Shown piece after piece: positions 39,905 through 46,749 of a stretch of 64,000 bases of DNA. Each line of letters starts with the position of its first letter. Position 1 is the first letter of the stretch. Source of the stretch: Stylophora pistillata (taxonomy: Eukaryota). The position numbers and the translations under genes are program-made. The notes beneath the pieces are model-generated. The model ran no database searches, was not told the origin of the DNA, and worked only from the letters and a program-made list of their open reading frames with translations. Where the stretch lies: positions 168,265-232,264 of the forward strand of contig NW_019217919.1 in the NCBI RefSeq assembly GCF_002571385.2, written 5' to 3'.

Positions 39905-40600
39905 TGTTTATTTATAGTAATAATAAGACTTTATTTATTGAGGATAGCACGTGATAGTGCACAAACACTAATAAACTTGTGGTCCTCTTAATTACAATAA
40001 ATATATAAATGCAAATACAATAGAATCACTAATATATTAAGATTACAAATATAAATAGAAATTTAGCTAATTACAAATAATATTTAATTGATAAAATATA
40101 TAATACAAGATAATATAAACAAGTAAGAATATATAAAACTACTATCAATAAAATTTACCGATTAAAATGAGCTAAGCATGATTTGTCATCATAATAATAT
40201 TTAAATACGTTGTCTTTAAAGGCCTTAAGTGTATTAGACTTTTTTAATTCAGGCTTTAACTGATTCCATAATTTTATGGCAGAAACTAGAAAAGTTTTCC
40301 CTCCTTCTCTAGCCCTTTTAAACTTAGGTAATAAAAAGTTGTATTTACAAAATCTAGTGTTGCGTGAATGTACTGAACTTAATAATCTTAAGCTATCATT
40401 AAGATAATTAGGTACACAATAATTAATCCTTTTAAATAGTATTGAACATTTAGCTATCTTAGTAGAGTTATAAAATGGTATCCACTTTAAACGATTGAAT
40501 AGCATAACTGATGAACTACGTGGTTCAGCATCTAATAAAACCCTAGCAGCTCTCTTTTGTAGCCTAAGTATTCTTAAAAGAGATTCATTAGAATAGCATA
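39905..40600 (-). mobile_element. 3' end of a non-LTR retrotransposon upstream of the NLR
   Basis: LRLQKRAARVLLDA...LFNRLKWIPF...HSRNTR...GGKTFLVSAIKLWNQL; AATAAA-rich tail. Confidence 0.85.
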
Positions 40601-41126
40601 CCTCGACTCAATTTCAGTTTATAGAAAGGAGTATCTTTACGATTTGAATGGCGAAAATTGATTCGCTTTATTGACGATTGTTGGAAAGCCTTCAAACTGA
40701 GCAAGAAGCTCTGGCCTTAGGAAAAGGCGTGGGTGAAGGGAGAATTTTCAGTGACAGCTCACATTTCTTTTAGTGGTGACGCGCTATTTGCATAAGAAGA
40801 GTCTCAGAAAGCGAAATTTCTCGCCATACTTGTAAATGTTCCTTTGGCGCATCCTTGAACGACATTTCATAGAATCTGAACAATAGAAACAATTTTAAAC
40901 AAGCAACACACTTCTGTCCATTTTATTTTCCAGTTTTAGTTTCCAATATCAGCTTACCGCTAAGTCGAGAAAATGATGGCTTGCGAAAACAAAACAATGA
41001 CAGCCATAAGTTTGCCAAGAGGTTAAATTGTAGTTTCGTCCATAAACTTTAAACCGAAACATTGTGTAACTGGAAGTCCACACCAAAGCTAAAGAGCGAT
41101 TTTCATCTACAAACAATATTGACACG

Positions 41127-44100
41127 ATGGATACTCTCAAGGAATCACTTGCACCAAAAACCTTCAACAAAATTAGCCATCTCGCAGTTTTAGTTTGGTT
41201 TGTGATCGGTGCAATCTTCCTTGGCATTTTTACTGAAGTGGAAAACACCGAATCCAGGTTTGATTTCCGTTGTGGCGGAGCGGAGACCGAAAACACTGAC
41301 CTCGTCCGTGGAGACTGCTTCCAGCAATACGAGGAGCAGTACAACAAATATGGTGTACCTATCTATGGCTTCGTGACCATCAATTTCTTCCTCATTGCAC
41401 TTGTTTGTGCTATTTTCTCCCAAATAGTGAGAAAGACCGTTGATGAACTATCGCCAAGCACTCGTAACGGCGACCGTGAGAGCCAGTCGCGCCACAGAGA
41501 GAAGCAAAAATCAACGGGAAAACAGCTTTTCATCGCTTACTGCTGTCAACTGTCCACAAGACTTGTTTTGGGAGTTCTTTTCATGATCCTTCAAACTCAG
41601 TTGCTTTATCCTTTAAGGTTTCCCTATAAGTTTGACTGTTATTTAACCTCTGGAACCAATCAGCCAAGGAACTTATCTGACGCCGCCCAAAACTCCACTC
41701 AGTTTCACAAATGTAACAATCAACGAGCGGAAAAGAAAACCTTCTGGATGTACGCTGTCCTAGCAGTTAATGGAATTTATGTCGCTGGAATTCTAATTGA
41801 AACCATCTACATTTTGTCACGGGCACGCGTAGAAACGAAGTTCATGAAAAACTCAGAGTTCCTTAAAATTCATCTAAATCCCAACCATGACAAGTCGTAT
41901 CAGGAACCTCAAAAGCAAGAAGGTAGAATACAGGTTGTTGTAATGCAGCCAAGAGTTCATGACAACCTTCCGACGCAACCCGGGTTGCACCCAGAACCTC
42001 AGAGGCAAGATGATGTTGCCCAATCGCAGCCACGAGAGCGAGAACACCGTCCAATCCAAGTCGAAATACACGTACACCCTCAAAAGCAAGATGATGTTAT
42101 TCCACCACACCCAAGAGAGCAAGAACACCGTCCGACCAAAATGGAGTCTTACCAAGAACCTCAAAGACAAAATGATGTTGTCCCACTACCGCCACGAGAC
42201 CAAATCGGGTCGCATCAAGAACCTCAACAGCCAGAGGGAAGGAGTGAACATGATATTATTTCTCCAGTGCAAAGGGAACCCGAACAGCTCCAAAACTCGA
42301 ATCTACAACTATTCATCGCCGAAACAAAGAAAATAATTAAAGAAAATACCCAACACCTTTTTGAACTCCAACCACCGTTTTTAGGAAACCCAGGCGAGCA
42401 AACGGCAGTTAAATATTTCACTCTGGATCAGATCTACACAAATCTTGTGGTCGTTCCAAATAGAGCTACATATGACTTTACTGCAAACAGAGAGGAGCAA
42501 CTCAAAGTTTATCCAAGGCCGCGCACGGAATCACAACTTAAAAGCCTGGAAGACCTCCTAAATGATAAAAGTAAAAAGGTTCTGATTGTCGGTCGCCCCG
42601 GAATCGGTAAGACATTTTGTTGTACTAAACTTCTCAGAAATTGGGCGTGTAAAGAAGTTTCTGAAATCCATTTTGATCCTGCTTTCTTAATAAAATTTAG
42701 AAGATTCAACTCAGACAACCACCTTAGCCTCAGGGAACTGTTGGTTCAGTCAGAGCATTTTCCTTCAGATCACCTGGATGATGAAGTCTGGAAATACATC
42801 CTGCAGCACCCTGAAAGTGTACTTATTCTTTTCGACGGATTTGATGAATTCAATCACAACGCAAACATCATCCAGTGGCCGGCCTCTAGTCCCAAAAGCA
42901 TTGAACAGAAGGTGCCTCTCCAAAGCCTCTATTACTGGCTTGTGACCGGGAAACTACTAAAAAATGCTTTAATTTTGACAACCACGAGACCAACGGCTTT
43001 GTCGAGCATCAAACGCCTTCCGTTCGACAAAACCTGCGAAATTCTGGGCTTCACAACCGAGCAAATTAAAGAATATGTCTCCAGATTTTGCGGAGATGAC
43101 AAGCAAGCAGGCGAAAGACTATGGCGACACATCAGCAGCAACATGAACTTACTTTCGCTCTGTTATATCCCCGTGAATAGCTTCATCATGTGCTCAAGTC
43201 TGTTCGAAATATTGCAGTTCGAAAGTTCCGCTAGTGCTACCCTCCCTTCCGAATTAACAACCCTTTACATGATTGCAGTGACCGTGTTTTACCTTAAACA
43301 CACAAAAGAATTCCGCGATAATGAGTCCACTCGCGAACACTTAGATTACAATAACTTGCCACCAGAAGTGGAGGAGAAATTCGAGAAACTTGGAAAAGTG
43401 GCGTTTGAAGGAATTAAAAAAGGAAAGCTGATCCTTGGAGGAAACGAAGTACGCGGGATGGAAGACAGCGCTCTCTTTCACCGCCTACCCGACTGTCGAA
43501 GTGATGCGTTAAAACGCGAACCACAATTCTGTTTCATTCATCTCACAATGCAGGAGTTTTTCGCTGCAAGGCACCTAGCGAACAACGTGAGTGAAACAGA
43601 ATTGAGGAACTTTGTTACAAAGAACAGCGAGAACGGCAAATGGCAACTAGTGATTCAGTTTCTAGCAGGACTAATGAACGATAAAGATGAACTACCGAGC
43701 GAAATTATCACCGACCTTCTTCCTGTGGAAACTGAAGAGGAAGAACGCTATGACGACGACGAACAGACAGGGAATGAAGAGGAATGGAAAGTAACCTGTT
43801 GGCCGACTAAGGACAAAAGAGATTTGGCAGTGACACTGTGTAAATGTGTAAACGAAAGTAAAAAGATGGAAATCATAGTCCAAAGAAAGCTACAACAAAT
43901 TAACTTTAATTGTGTAAATTTTATTGCAAGTCACCTCACAGCTGTGGAATGCTCTTCGTTAATAAATGTAATTAAGAATATTGAACAAATTTCACATTTA
44001 GATTTGATGGACAATAACATGGACTCATTAGGCTGTCTCGAGATTGCTAAATTGTTAATATATTGGAAATGTCGACTAAGCTGGTTAAACCTCGCAGAGA

Positions 44101-44873
44101 ATCAACTGACAGACGAAGCAGTAAAGCATTTAGCTAACGCCATCACAAACAACAACTGTCAGCTACGCTCGTTAAACCTCTCAGAAAATAACATCACAGA
44201 CACAGGAGCACAGCACTTGGCTGAAGCCATCACAAACAACAACTGTCAGCTACGCTCGTTAAACCTCTCAGAAAATAACATCACAGACACAGGAGCACAG
44301 CACTTGGCTGAAGCCATCACGAACAACAAGTGTCAGCTACACACGTTAAGCCTCTCGTTCAATTACATCACAGTCACAGGAGCACAGCACTTGGCTGAAG
44401 CCATCACAGACAGCTGTCAGCTACGCTCGTTAAACCTCTCAAAAAATAACATCACAGACACAGGAGCACAGTACTTGGCTGACGCCATCACAAAAAACAA
44501 CTTTCAGCTACGCACGTTAAACCTCTCACAAAATAACATCACAGACACAGGAGTACAGCACTTGGCTCACGCCATTACAAGCAACAACTGTCAGCTACAC
44601 ACGTTAAACCTCTCATACAATAACATCACAGACACAGGAGCACAGCACTTGGCTGACGCCATAACAAACAACGACTGTCAGCTACACACGTTAGACCTCT
44701 TAGGCAATAACATCACAGACACAGGAGCACAGCACTTGGCTGACGCCATTACTAACAACAACTGTCAGCTACGCTCGTTAAACCTCTCATACAATAACAT
44801 GACAAAAGTAGGTAAGCAACATGCACGTAATTTAGTGAGCAAGAGTCAGTCTAAGTGTAAGCTAGATATTTAA
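41127..44873 (+). CDS. Single-exon NLR: connexin-like 4TM domain (aa ~1-232), P/Q/E-rich repeat linker, NACHT, RI-like LRRs
   Basis: 1248-aa ORF; four hydrophobic helices; Walker A GRPGIGKT, Walker B LILFDGFDE, sensor TTTRP, LCYIPV, winged-helix FIHLTMQEFFAA; ~10 LRRs of 28 aa. Confidence 0.95.
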   Translation: MDTLKESLAPKTFNKISHLAVLVWFVIGAIFLGIFTEVENTESRFDFRCGGAETENTDLVRGDCFQQYEEQYNKYGVPIYGFVTINFFLIALVCAIFSQIVRKTVDELSPSTRNGDRESQSRHREKQKSTGKQLFIAYCCQLSTRLVLGVLFMILQTQLLYPLRFPYKFDCYLTSGTNQPRNLSDAAQNSTQFHKCNNQRAEKKTFWMYAVLAVNGIYVAGILIETIYILSRARVETKFMKNSEFLKIHLNPNHDKSYQEPQKQEGRIQVVVMQPRVHDNLPTQPGLHPEPQRQDDVAQSQPREREHRPIQVEIHVHPQKQDDVIPPHPREQEHRPTKMESYQEPQRQNDVVPLPPRDQIGSHQEPQQPEGRSEHDIISPVQREPEQLQNSNLQLFIAETKKIIKENTQHLFELQPPFLGNPGEQTAVKYFTLDQIYTNLVVVPNRATYDFTANREEQLKVYPRPRTESQLKSLEDLLNDKSKKVLIVGRPGIGKTFCCTKLLRNWACKEVSEIHFDPAFLIKFRRFNSDNHLSLRELLVQSEHFPSDHLDDEVWKYILQHPESVLILFDGFDEFNHNANIIQWPASSPKSIEQKVPLQSLYYWLVTGKLLKNALILTTTRPTALSSIKRLPFDKTCEILGFTTEQIKEYVSRFCGDDKQAGERLWRHISSNMNLLSLCYIPVNSFIMCSSLFEILQFESSASATLPSELTTLYMIAVTVFYLKHTKEFRDNESTREHLDYNNLPPEVEEKFEKLGKVAFEGIKKGKLILGGNEVRGMEDSALFHRLPDCRSDALKREPQFCFIHLTMQEFFAARHLANNVSETELRNFVTKNSENGKWQLVIQFLAGLMNDKDELPSEIITDLLPVETEEEERYDDDEQTGNEEEWKVTCWPTKDKRDLAVTLCKCVNESKKMEIIVQRKLQQINFNCVNFIASHLTAVECSSLINVIKNIEQISHLDLMDNNMDSLGCLEIAKLLIYWKCRLSWLNLAENQLTDEAVKHLANAITNNNCQLRSLNLSENNITDTGAQHLAEAITNNNCQLRSLNLSENNITDTGAQHLAEAITNNKCQLHTLSLSFNYITVTGAQHLAEAITDSCQLRSLNLSKNNITDTGAQYLADAITKNNFQLRTLNLSQNNITDTGVQHLAHAITSNNCQLHTLNLSYNNITDTGAQHLADAITNNDCQLHTLDLLGNNITDTGAQHLADAITNNNCQLRSLNLSYNNMTKVGKQHARNLVSKSQSKCKLDI
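44085..44800 (+). repeat. 84-bp coding tandem repeat (LRR array)
   Basis: Unit CAGCTACGCTCGTTAAACCTCTCA...AACATCACAGACACAGGAGCACAGCACTTGGCTGAAGCCATCACA repeated about 8 times. Confidence 0.95.
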
Positions 44874-45093
44874 GCCTCGCCAACTCCAATTATAAACTGT
44901 TTATAAAAAAATTATGTGAACCACTTACAATTCAAAATAACTTTGAGTCACACTTTGAGTCAACCAGCTCAGAGACATTATCACGACGTAACAACTCATG
45001 AATGATAACCAACTAAATTGGTGAACTGTGAAGCGCTCACAGCAGCGAGAGTATTTGAACCGGATCGAAATGAAGAAAATTAAACCAATGAAC

Positions 45094-46749
45094 ATGTTTA
45101 TTGAGAGCTAAGGATGTCAATCTTTTTTAAACGAACCAATAACATTGAAGTAAAAACGCAGAGCTTTATGCAGAGAACAGACAAACTTCGGACCTCTCAG
45201 GAAACGTTGTCATTTTATAACAAATGATTGGTTAGTTTCGATCCTAAATTTACTGCATGCTTTTGCATGTTTTGATCGCTTTTGAAGTTCTTTTGCCGAT
45301 TAATTCATGGCAGAATACGTTTGTTTTAATTTTTAATTTTTTTAATTTTAAGGGAAGCGATCCGGTTCACTTAGTTTCATACTTACTGCCAATGAAATCG
45401 TAAAATATTAACTTGTCGCGCTTCAAAAACAAAAGCCTTTTTTTGTAGATTCACGGAGTGAGATTTATATTATGTCAATTTAAGCAATTTTTTGAGGTCT
45501 CCGCTGTTGTTGTTATTATTAGTGTAGTTTTAACGTATGGAGGGCCTGCTACTTGTCTGATATAATCAAATATCCCTGCAAAACCTGAGAACGAAGCTGC
45601 AGACTTCCACAGTTAGGATTTTAACTTGCCACTACTTGTATCTAGAACCATGCAGAACTCCAAAATTTATCAGTGTAGAATAAATGTTTTAAACTGATGA
45701 AAACCCTGTGTTGTGATCTATTTATCCCCTATGATTTGACCTAACTTGGAAGATGTGGGGAAGGGTAGGGAGGCAGGGGGGAGAAAGATGTAGCCTTTTA
45801 AATATCAAGTAAAAACAAAATGAATTTACCAAAGAAACATGCCTTAAGTCCCCTATGGAAGCACAGATCACCTACTGTTAATCTCTTAAGTCCCAAGATC
45901 TGATCGCCTAACTCCCCTCTACCAGTTACAAATTTCCATGTAAATTAATTGTGAGAATTTGGTAGTATATCAAGATAAACAGCTCTACCTGATAAGTTTG
46001 ATTATTCTCACAACCTGTTTACTGCATATTGTATGATTATTGTAGAGAGAAGTTACATGGTAATCACTTCTGCAAGTTAAAGGGTTTATTAGGAGGTTAA
46101 GGACTCAAAAAAGAAAAAAAAAAAAAAAGCTGGCAGCATCCTCTTAAAACCCTTACCATACCCAAGATTAAATGATTTTCCCCTTCTTCTTTCAAACCTG
46201 GACAAACGTTTTTCTGCATACCTCATATTGACAGTAAATATTGTATTTCCATAAATAAGCAGCCACATTCCAATAAGCACCTTCCCCTTAGGCCATAATG
46301 TCAAATAAGCACCCCTCCTCAAATAAGTGCCCCACCCCCCCCACTCTCTTTTAGAGGTGCAAAGGGAACTGTTTCTATTGCCACTTTATTGATAACTTAC
46401 TAAGCTTCAATTACAGCAGTATCAGCACAGAAAATTCTTATCATGTTTGTTCTGGGAATTTGATACTGTATCTACTATTTATCCCCTACTCCATACTTTT
46501 TCTTTATTCTCATGACTTGTCTGCTTGATATTGTATTGATGAAGTAAAGAGAAACTCTATCTTGGTCACTCACAGGAGTTAAAGGGTTAAAGAATAGCTT
46601 TGAGGCATCCCAGCCATTTTTTGAACAATTTGAAAGGAAATATAAGCTGCACAAGTTCTAACTATAGGAAATTAGTATAATTGCAGAGCTGAGCAAAGAG
46701 TTTCCAGCAATCTGATTGGTTAAGCAGTTCCTTATATGACGCTATATAA
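45094..46749. repeat. ~1.65-kb segment duplicated almost identically at 50628-52283
   Basis: Constant offset of 5534 bp; identical spurious ORFs at 46089 and 51623. Confidence 0.95.
45878..46087. mobile_element. TTAA-bounded MITE family; partial relatives at ~27370, ~38575, ~46500, ~48640, ~57600
   Basis: Termini TTAA(C)CCTTTAAC..CC / GTTAAAGGGTTAA and a shared internal GAATTTGGTGTTAGATCAAG; piggyBac-like by inference. Confidence 0.55.

What the first reader, a model, noticed from the sequence alone, without database searches (positions are those of the whole stretch)
41250..41745. Extracellular loops point to a non-docking hemichannel: one disulfide pair missing and two N-glycan sequons
Seen: loop 1 has C49 and C64; loop 2 has C171 and C196, plus sequons N182-L-S and N189-S-T. 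Established: Cx26 has three inter-loop disulfides (C53-C180, C60-C174, C64-C169) and is not glycosylated, whereas pannexins have two Cys per loop and glycans that block docking. Inference: the four Cys match the two outer pairs, and both partners of the middle pair are absent together. That supports the homology and suggests a single-membrane channel rather than a gap junction.
Basis: partly seen in the sequence, partly recalled or inferred. Interest (0 to 1): 0.75.

Follow-up and report, generated by a model that had tools for sequence, protein, structure and literature searches.

The report
Coral connexin-like NLR: glycosylated outer loops
This stretch encodes the two outward-facing loops of a connexin-type membrane channel fused to an immune-sensor (NLR) protein in a coral-like genome, a gene family already described in a 2026 preprint as single-membrane channels, so the finding mostly confirms known work.

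Summary
Window 41127-44873 (+) is one intact 1248-aa ORF: a 4-TM connexin-like (CxL) domain, a Q/P-rich linker, NACHT and LRRs. C49, C64, C171, C196 and the sequons N182-L-S and N189-S-T are there.

A family profile matches solved connexins almost exclusively (34 of 35 PDB hits; best Cx31.3, E 1.4e-12). It aligns the four Cys with the first and third Cys of each connexin loop, so the middle pair is missing. The AF2 model (pLDDT 86.9) has a connexin fold.

The four Cys are near-invariant in 108 relatives. Sequons between the loop-2 Cys are enriched: 166 observed against 71 ± 7 from shuffles. They sit in an insertion at the place of the Cx26 docking residues.

Butler et al. (bioRxiv, June 2026) already describe anthozoan CxL-NLRs, their two Cys per loop, and hemichannel-only behaviour in three tested homologues.

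The missing-pair argument is weak: four-Cys Cx23 forms gap junctions. Glycosylation is not mentioned in that preprint's main text and is the only modest addition. Cys-Cys distances could not be measured.

The scan met this family before on another piece of this genome (s1-781811).

The parts
41127..44873 (+). Single-exon ORF of 1248 aa plus stop: connexin-like NLR (CxL-NACHT-LRR)
   Evidence: ORF list. Pfam: NACHT E 3.8e-29, LRR_6 E 2.5e-34, Connexin E 7e-5. Contigs from RNA libraries lie colinear on it, with no splice joint inside the CxL part.
41127..41168 (+). N-terminal segment, residues 1-14 (MDTLKESLAPKTFN), with four charged residues; short helix at 2-7
   Evidence: AF2 secondary structure; sequence. 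The preprint links charged N-terminal helices to voltage gating.
41169..41249 (+). TM1 helix, residues 15-41
   Evidence: Hydropathy; AF2 helix 15-41
41250..41360 (+). Outer loop 1, residues 42-78. C49 (41271-41273) lies in strand 47-50 and C64 (41316-41318) in helix 54-72. C-C spacing is 15, against 11 in Cx31.3.
   Evidence: C49 kept in 104 of 108, C64 in 108 of 108.
41361..41450 (+). TM2 helix, residues 79-108
41451..41522 (+). Cytoplasmic loop, residues 109-132; basic (K+R 7 of 24); low model confidence
41523..41606 (+). TM3 helix, residues 133-160
   Evidence: Best-conserved match to connexin TM3 ('aYccqL..Rlvl' against 'AYVAQLGARLVL').
41607..41720 (+). Outer loop 2, residues 161-198. 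C171 (41637-41639) lies in strand 168-174 and C196 (41712-41714) in strand 191-198. C-C spacing is 25, against 11 in Cx31.3.
   Evidence: Both Cys kept in 108 of 108.
41670..41699 (+). The two N-glycan sequons, N182-L-S (41670-41678) and N189-S-T (41691-41699). They lie inside a 14-residue insertion relative to Cx31.3, in the low-confidence tip of loop 2.
   Evidence: Column occupancy 22 of 31 and 19 of 31. Insertion seen in the alignment. pLDDT 74 and 61 for residue blocks 171-190.
41721..41831 (+). TM4 helix, residues 199-235, starting with the connexin-like motif after the last Cys (C-N-N-Q-R-A-E-K-K-T-F, against C-N-L-S-R-P-S-E-K-T-I in Cx31.3)
41832..42536 (+). Cytosolic linker rich in Q, P and E, residues 236-470
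   Evidence: Composition: Q 31, P 28, E 24 of 235
42579..43094 (+). NACHT NTPase domain, residues 485-656
   Evidence: Pfam PF05729, 102.1 bits against cut-off 26.7
44076..44846 (+). C-terminal leucine-rich repeats, 29-aa units
   Evidence: Pfam LRR_6, 7 stretches. 87-bp tandem unit x 8.4 copies, 87% matches, at 44076-44804.

Best explanation
The stretch encodes the two extracellular (or lumenal) loops of the connexin-like channel domain at the N-terminus of a single-exon coral NLR.

Shown here:
- The domain is a connexin homologue with a connexin fold.
- Its four loop Cys are the equivalents of the first and third Cys of each connexin loop.
- Loop 2 carries a 14-residue insertion (against Cx31.3) between the positions of the connexin middle and last Cys. 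That is where the Cx26 docking residues N176 and T177 lie.
- The insertion holds N-glycan sequons that are kept across the family even where their exact positions shift.

Inferred:
- C49-C196 and C64-C171 form two inter-loop disulfides that staple the three-stranded loop sheet.
- One or both Asn are glycosylated in the ER.
- The protein assembles like its tested relatives into a roughly hexameric plasma-membrane hemichannel that releases small molecules such as ATP or glutamate, and does not dock into gap junctions. The enlarged, glycan-bearing loop 2 is the likely steric reason.
- The cytosolic NACHT-LRR part may couple immune sensing to the pore. This last step is speculative.
For: Sequence homology:
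- Pfam Connexin is the only 4-TM family hit of note (28.2 bits, E 1.9e-6).
- The profile of 55 family members hits connexins in 34 of 35 PDB matches. The best is 6l3t_A (Cx31.3), E 1.4e-12, covering loop 1 to TM4, with Cys-to-Cys correspondences.

Structure:
- AF2 model pLDDT 86.9, pTM 0.79, with strands at 47-50, 168-174 and 191-198 and a loop-1 helix at 54-72.
- All 50 entries listed by Foldseek are connexins.
- VIA-align places connexins at Z 13.8-15.1, with nearly whole chains aligned.

Conservation:
- Cys conservation and loop-2-specific sequon enrichment.
- Features extend to an octocoral relative (P0176, Dendronephthya gigantea; 2 Cys per loop and 2 loop-2 sequons).

Literature:
- Cx26 C169-C64 disulfide and docking role of N176/T177: PMC10604905 passage.
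- Anthozoan CxLs reach the plasma membrane, release ATP and glutamate, and show no plaques or dye transfer (3 constructs): preprint sections 6-8.
- Glycans hinder pannexin docking: PMC8769644 abstract and introduction.

Expression:
- Contigs from RNA libraries of three studies cover the CxL part with 0-4 differences.
Against: - Nothing was measured on this protein.
- The single-sequence Pfam score is below the gathering cut-off (28.2 against 31.3).
- The sequon-bearing tip is the least confident part of loop 2 in the model (pLDDT 61-74).
- No coordinates were available, so the disulfide geometry is untested.
- Four-Cys Cx23 forms gap junctions, and some glycosylated innexins do too. Neither feature excludes docking.
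- By fold alone LRRC8A (Z 14.5) ties with connexins.
- Raw RNA reads of X24 gave zero depth on the CxL part, with about 2% of the run read. Contigs from RNA libraries cannot prove transcription, and in X7 the upstream flank is covered as well.
- The HeLa tests in the preprint used other paralogues and a heterologous cell.
Confidence: 0.7

Rival explanations
1. The domain still docks head-to-head and forms intercellular (gap-junction) channels in coral tissue, despite four Cys and the sequons.
For: Cx23, with the same four-Cys pattern, forms gap-junction channels (PMC4729916 passage). Some innexins with extracellular sequons form gap junctions (PMC8769644 legend). Protostome CxLs form gap junctions (preprint section 7). 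HeLa cells may lack coral partners.
Against: Three of three anthozoan CxLs tested gave no plaques and no dye transfer. Loop 2 is more than doubled in C-C spacing (25 against 11) exactly at the docking segment. Only 3 of 108 relatives have a connexin-like short loop 2.
Confidence: 0.08
2. The 4-TM domain serves mainly as a membrane anchor and oligomerisation scaffold that places the NLR on an internal membrane (ER, phagosome or symbiosome). The loops face the lumen and no physiologically relevant pore exists.
For: Disulfides and sequons only show lumenal or extracellular exposure, not plasma-membrane residence. NLRs signal by oligomerisation. 92% of anthozoan CxLs carry a NACHT domain (preprint section 5).
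Against: Tested homologues with a NACHT domain (edCxL50, pmCxL62) release ATP or glutamate on depolarisation (preprint section 8), and pmCxL30 localised at the plasma membrane. The connexin-type N-terminal segment and the TM helices are conserved.
Confidence: 0.15
3. It is not a connexin relative but a pannexin/innexin/LRRC8-type large-pore channel. This would be suggested by two Cys per loop, glycan sequons and the LRR fusion.
For: Two Cys per loop is the innexin signature. LRRC8A scores Z 14.5, pannexins 11.7-13.3 and INX-6 10.7 in fold comparison. LRRC8 proteins also join a 4-TM pore domain to LRRs (recalled).
Against: No Innexin/Pannexin Pfam hit at E up to 1. The family profile finds 34 connexin sequences and no pannexin, innexin or LRRC8 in the PDB. 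Identity in the structural alignments is 15-21% to connexins against 8-12% to the others, and connexin chains are covered almost fully. The preprint's network analysis agrees.
Confidence: 0.03
4. This copy is a silent or decaying paralogue of a large family, and the features are inherited rather than used.
For: 55 matches in the genome, several with in-frame stops. Zero raw RNA reads of X24 on the CxL part.
Against: Intact 1248-aa frame with all domains. Near-identical contigs in RNA libraries of three studies, with an empty upstream flank in two of them (X2, X6).
Confidence: 0.04

Closest known systems
Anthozoan connexin-like NLRs (CxL-NLRs; Butler et al., bioRxiv 10.64898/2026.06.13.731801; for example pmCxL62, edCxL50)
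   Same: N-terminal CxL domain, then NACHT, then LRR. Single coding exon. Two Cys per outer loop. Large species-specific gene family (55 matches here; 4-100 copies reported). Nearest named relatives are from Pocillopora, Stylophora and Desmophyllum.
   Different: This paralogue was not tested. The conserved loop-2 sequons and the assignment of the lost pair to the middle Cys are not stated in the preprint's main text ('glycosyl' 0 and 'disulfide' 0 occurrences). Its supplements could not be opened.
Vertebrate Cx23 / GJE1 (epsilon-clade connexin)
   Same: Four extracellular Cys, because the second Cys of each loop is absent (PMC4729916 passage). This is the same pattern as found here by alignment.
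   Different: Cx23 is reported to form gap-junction channels as well as hemichannels. It has no NLR fusion. I did not examine its loop lengths or sequons.
Human Cx31.3 / GJC3 (PDB 6l3t)
   Same: Best sequence-profile match (E 1.4e-12) and best Foldseek match (E 3.6e-6). Cited in the preprint's discussion as a non-junctional connexin.
   Different: It keeps all three Cys per loop, with 11-residue spacing in both loops. It has no loop-2 insertion, no sequons in the aligned loop segment and no NLR part.
Pannexins (Panx1-3)
   Same: Two Cys per loop, extracellular N-glycans held to hinder docking, single-membrane ATP-release channels (PMC8769644). Similar overall fold (Z 11.7-13.3).
   Different: No detectable sequence relationship. 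This is analogy, not membership.
LRRC8 / VRAC subunits
   Same: A 4-TM large-pore domain followed by cytosolic LRRs (recalled). Fold match Z 14.5.
   Different: The LRRC8 pore domain is of pannexin type (recalled) and has no NACHT. Only 9% identity in the structural alignment and no profile hit.

Membership tests
Connexin superfamily (Pfam PF00029) | Significant sequence match to connexin profiles or sequences | tested here: met
   The single sequence is below Pfam's cut-off (28.2 against 31.3 bits, E 1.9e-6). The 55-member family profile hits Cx31.3 at E 1.4e-12, and 34 of 35 PDB matches are connexins. Many relatives carry a precomputed PF00029 hit.
Connexin superfamily (Pfam PF00029) | Four TM helices, N- and C-termini cytosolic, two outer loops forming a small beta sheet | tested here: met
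   Hydropathy. AF2 helices 15-41, 79-108, 133-160, 199-235 and strands 47-50, 168-174, 191-198. Basic cytoplasmic loop. All 50 entries listed by Foldseek are connexins.
Connexin superfamily (Pfam PF00029) | Three conserved Cys in each outer loop (three inter-loop disulfides) | tested here: not met
   Two Cys per loop. The connexin middle Cys positions face V60 and about G176. The same exception is known in Cx23, so this does not exclude membership.
Connexin superfamily (Pfam PF00029) | Hexameric pore; docking into gap junctions | not testable with these tools
   Monomer model only, no coordinates. Homologues were tested by others as hemichannels without junctions.
Anthozoan CxL-NLR family (Butler et al. 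2026) | N-terminal CxL domain followed by NACHT and LRRs in one, typically single-exon, gene | tested here: met
   One ORF with Connexin, NACHT and LRR_6 hits in that order. No splice joint in the CxL part.
Anthozoan CxL-NLR family (Butler et al. 2026) | Two Cys in each extracellular loop; enlarged loops | tested here: met
   C-C spacing 15 and 25 here, against 11 and 11 in Cx31.3. Family medians are 15 and 26.
Anthozoan CxL-NLR family (Butler et al. 2026) | Hemichannel activity (depolarisation- or CO2-evoked ATP/glutamate release), no gap junctions | not testable with these tools
   Bench assays only. Shown for other members in the preprint.
Pannexin/innexin family (Pfam PF00876) | Sequence match to innexin/pannexin profiles | tested here: not met
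   No such family at E up to 1. No pannexin, innexin or LRRC8 chain among the 35 PDB profile matches.
Pannexin/innexin family (Pfam PF00876) | Two Cys per loop and extracellular N-glycosylation | tested here: inconclusive
   The Cys count and conserved sequons are present, but occupancy is untested. This is a functional resemblance only.

The most novel reading that the evidence does not exclude
Conserved N-glycans on a loop-2 insertion, placed exactly where connexins carry their docking residues, are what makes anthozoan connexin-like channels single-membrane channels. This would be an independent, pannexin-like solution arising inside the connexin lineage itself. On this reading, gap-junction-forming protostome CxLs should lack the insertion or the sequons, and removing N182/N189 or trimming the insertion might permit docking. 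It would give a testable structural switch between hemichannel and junction at the base of connexin evolution, in a protein whose pore is tethered to an NLR sensor.
Probability: 0.3. Interest if true: 0.55.

Novelty: new member of a known kind. Interest (0 to 1): 0.3.

Why it matters
Connexins were long thought to be confined to chordates. The 2026 preprint changed that and tied them to innate immunity in corals. This window adds one more intact member.

It also adds a family-wide detail that I did not find in print. The preprint's main text has no 'glycosyl'. No paper in the library holds 'connexin', 'N-glycosylation' and 'anthozoan' together. The preprint's supplements were not visible.

The detail is that loop 2 carries positively maintained N-glycan sequons at the docking position, alongside the Cx23-like loss of the middle disulfide. 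If the glycans explain hemichannel-only behaviour, this would parallel pannexins and help decide whether ancestral connexins were hemichannels.

As a discovery the core claim is already published, so the value here is confirmation plus a cheap, testable refinement.

Tried and rejected
- A single-sequence phmmer search of the 248-aa domain against PDB sequences gave only a chance hit (E 0.89, lipid-transfer protein). Family profiles were needed.
- The first, shallow profile (A1, 22 sequences) aligned only TM2-TM4 with connexins, so loop 1 could not be assigned until the broader A2 profile was used.
- I tried to test whether gap-junction-forming protostome CxLs lack the sequons:
  - The profile search with source names returned only coral names (Pocillopora, Stylophora, Desmophyllum) among 76 hits.
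  - A cluster look-up of 10 divergent representatives named only one, an octocoral.
  - No protostome sequence was obtained, and the test remains open.
- I searched the own genome for the quoted N-terminal motif of pmCxL30, to find a tested orthologue. The single hit, with one mismatch, lies in a ribosomal-protein-like ORF and is a chance match. None of the 220 held proteins has the motif.
- A loose-end consensus at 40592 was checked as a possible upstream exon of this gene. It is not elsewhere in the window, so it belongs to another transcript.
- The pannexin/innexin/LRRC8 reading was rejected on sequence grounds, although fold scores tie.
- The supplements of the preprint (loop figure, motif tables) are closed and may already show the loops or the sequons.
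Full report
**What is there.**
- Window 41127-44873 (+) is one uninterrupted ORF of 1248 aa.
- Pfam finds a NACHT domain (residues 485-656, E 3.8e-29), seven LRR_6 stretches (E 2.5e-34) and a sub-threshold Connexin match. The Connexin match is 28.2 bits for the first 248 residues, against a gathering score of 31.3, E 1.9e-6. It covers residues 114-229 and profile positions 123-223 of 225.
- Hydropathy gives four hydrophobic segments.
- The finding's coordinates 41250-41745 correspond to residues 42-206, that is loop 1 to loop 2.

**The observation.**
- One search confirms Cys at 49, 64, 171 and 196.
- It also confirms that N182-L-S and N189-S-T are the only sequons in the first 260 residues.
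- The remaining Cys of the domain (94, 139, 140) lie inside hydrophobic segments.

**Is it a connexin?**
- A single-sequence search of PDB sequences found nothing meaningful.
- The genome itself (G000, 398 Mb) holds 55 matches to the domain at E up to 0.01, about twenty of them full length. Public protein sets hold many more: 29 at 90% clustering and 322 representatives at E up to 0.001.
- A profile of 22 copies hit 12 PDB sequences, all connexins, but aligned only TM2-TM4.
- A broader profile (A2, 55 sequences down to 23% identity) hit 35 PDB sequences. Of these, 34 are connexins and the 35th is rhodopsin at E 0.9. The best is Cx31.3/GJC3 (6l3t_A) at E 1.4e-12, over profile positions 47-276 and chain residues 49-262.
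- The AF2 model built on A2 has mean pLDDT 86.9 and pTM 0.79.
- Foldseek against the PDB lists 50 entries (ranks to 50, further chains of listed entries omitted), all connexins. The best is 6l3t_A, E 3.6e-6, TM-score 0.66 on the target.
- VIA-align against 48,161 representatives ranks connexins at Z 13.8-15.1 with nearly whole chains aligned. LRRC8A (Z 14.5), pannexins (11.7-13.3) and INX-6 (10.7) are close.
- So fold alone does not separate the large-pore families. The sequence profile does, and no Innexin family appears in Pfam at E up to 1.

**Which Cys are which?** All correspondences below come from the alignment.
- Profile 'dfrC' lies on Cx31.3 'EFVC', the first loop-1 Cys. Profile 'gkCfeqY' lies on 'AACFDAF', the third loop-1 Cys. 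The connexin's middle Cys faces the position of V60.
- In loop 2, 'FsC' lies on 'FAC' (first Cys) and 'yeChnqrAtkkt' on 'ITCNLSRPSEKT' (third Cys). The middle Cys faces about G176.
- A 14-residue insertion follows, before the last Cys. C-C spacing is 15 and 25 here, against 11 and 11 in Cx31.3.
- The Cx26 pairing C64-C169 is stated in a passage of PMC10604905.
- The secondary structure fits a connexin-type loop sheet. C49 lies in strand 47-50, C171 in strand 168-174, C196 in strand 191-198 and C64 in helix 54-72.
- The tool returns no coordinates, so the Cys-Cys distances remain untested.

**Conservation.**
- In 31 full-length domains (18 of the 30 fetched own-genome loci, window copy included, and 13 of 29 database proteins; the rest were partial), C49 is kept in 30 of 31 and the other three Cys in 31 of 31.
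- In 108 full-length domains out of 176 held proteins, C49 is kept in 104 of 108 and the other three in 108 of 108. Exactly two Cys occur in loop 1 in 102 of 108 and in loop 2 in 99 of 108.
- Sequons concentrate in loop 2: 4.43 per 100 aa against 0.4 or less in every other segment. At least one is present in 30 of 31; the exception, L022, has a short loop. The N182 column is occupied in 22 of 31 and the N189 column in 19 of 31.
- In the wider set, 103 of 108 have at least one loop-2 sequon, against 20 of 108 for loop 1.
- Between the two loop-2 Cys there are 166 sequons, against 71.3 ± 7.0 (maximum 96) in 2000 within-loop shuffles. Loop 1 (3 against 7.3) and the cytoplasmic loop (24 against 29.2) are not enriched.
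- Divergent paralogues (L026, L028, L029, 35-38% identical) keep sequons at shifted positions. That pattern is expected if the glycan, rather than the exact site, is selected.
- The sequences are related, so these figures are descriptive, not probabilities.

**Where the sequons sit.**
- They lie in the insertion between the positions of the connexin middle and last loop-2 Cys.
- In Cx26 that segment holds N176 and T177, described as crucial for head-to-head docking (PMC10604905 passage).
- It is also the least confident part of loop 2 in the model (pLDDT 74 and 61 for residue blocks 171-190). That is compatible with a flexible, protruding tip.
- Only 3 of 108 relatives have a loop-2 C-C spacing of 13 or less.

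**Topology.**
- The cytoplasmic loop is basic (K+R 7 of 24), against 4 of 37 and 4 of 38 for the outer loops.
- An even number of TM helices places the NACHT-LRR part on the same side as the N-terminus.
- Conserved Cys pairs and sequon enrichment confined to loop 2 fit a lumenal or extracellular location.

**Expression.**
- Runs holding the stretch come from nine studies.
- Laid on 40300-45300, RNA-library contigs cover the CxL part:
  - X7: 41079-41761 with 1 difference.
  - X2: 41005-41288 and 41724-43147, with 3 differences each.
  - X6: 41022-41180, 41225-41416 and 41705-42333.
- The upstream flank 40634-40967 is empty or nearly so in X2 and X6, but is covered in X7.
- Raw reads of X24 (about 2% of the run read) give no depth on the CxL part.
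- No splice joint falls in the CxL part.
- Contigs cannot prove transcription or strand, so expression is likely but low and not proven.

**What is already known.**
- I read the abstract and sections 5, 6, 7 and 9 of Butler et al. (bioRxiv 10.64898/2026.06.13.731801, June 2026), plus passages of sections 8 and 10. The preprint describes anthozoan connexin-like domains present in 4-100 copies per coral genome. 92% of them carry a NACHT domain, and they are typically single-exon.
- It reports plasma-membrane localisation for pmCxL30. It reports depolarisation- and CO2-evoked ATP/glutamate release.
- For three cnidarian constructs it reports no plaques and no dye transfer. [quoted passage not shown]
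- The words 'glycosyl' and 'disulfide' do not occur in its main text.
- No paper in the library holds 'connexin', 'N-glycosylation' and 'anthozoan' together.

**Verdict on the interpretation.**
- The conclusion of a single-membrane channel matches the published tests on relatives. It is also made plausible by the enlarged, sequon-bearing loop 2.
- The disulfide argument does not carry weight. Cx23 lacks the same second Cys of each loop and is reported to form gap-junction channels (PMC4729916 passage citing Iovine 2008). Cx31.3, named among the non-gap-junction-forming exceptions in the preprint's discussion, shows all three Cys per loop in the alignment.
- Sequons are suggestive only. N-glycosylation is held to hinder pannexin docking, but some innexins with extracellular sequons form gap junctions (PMC8769644 abstract, introduction and figure legend).
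- I therefore rate the interpretation partly supported.

**Novelty and score.**
- The gene is a new member of a family already described.
- The modest addition is the family-wide, loop-2-specific maintenance of N-glycan sequons at the docking position, plus the explicit Cx23-like assignment of the lost pair.
- An earlier follow-up in this scan reached the same 'already described' verdict for another CxL gene on another piece of this genome (s1-781811). I had found and read the preprint before seeing that note.
- Interest 0.3.

Noticed in passing
L011 (G000:C527), L019 (G000:C2040), L007 (G000:C119): Own-genome copies of the connexin-like domain sit in very long open frames: 5009, 2514 and 2024 aa without stops. 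These are far longer than the 1248-aa gene of the window. Their extra domains were not examined.
   Followed up: no
window 40300-40592: This stretch is deeply covered in all four RNA runs. 42 raw reads of X24 leave the window at 40592 (loose end). The 30-letter continuation is not elsewhere in the window. This looks like the exon end of another transcript, about 500 bases upstream of the CxL-NLR start.
   Followed up: partly
window 44076-44804: The LRR part is a tandem array of an 87-bp (29-aa) unit, 8.4 copies, 87% matches. Summed contig depth there reaches about 2e5 in X2, with many records fitting two places. Reads of many paralogues therefore pile up, and depth there says nothing about this gene.
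   Followed up: partly
model of window 41127-41870: By fold alone LRRC8A (Z 14.5) ties with connexins (13.8-15.1), and pannexins and INX-6 follow closely. Structure searches cannot by themselves assign such domains to one large-pore family.
   Followed up: yes
G000:C802 (L012, L014, L015, L020, L022, L025 and further matches): At least nine matches to the CxL domain lie on one contig within about 90 kb, several of them with in-frame stops. This is a local cluster of intact and decayed copies.
   Followed up: no
L031 1240-1641: The motif search for the pmCxL30 N-terminus hit a ribosomal-protein-like ORF by chance. That ORF contains an X, that is an N in the DNA.
   Followed up: yes
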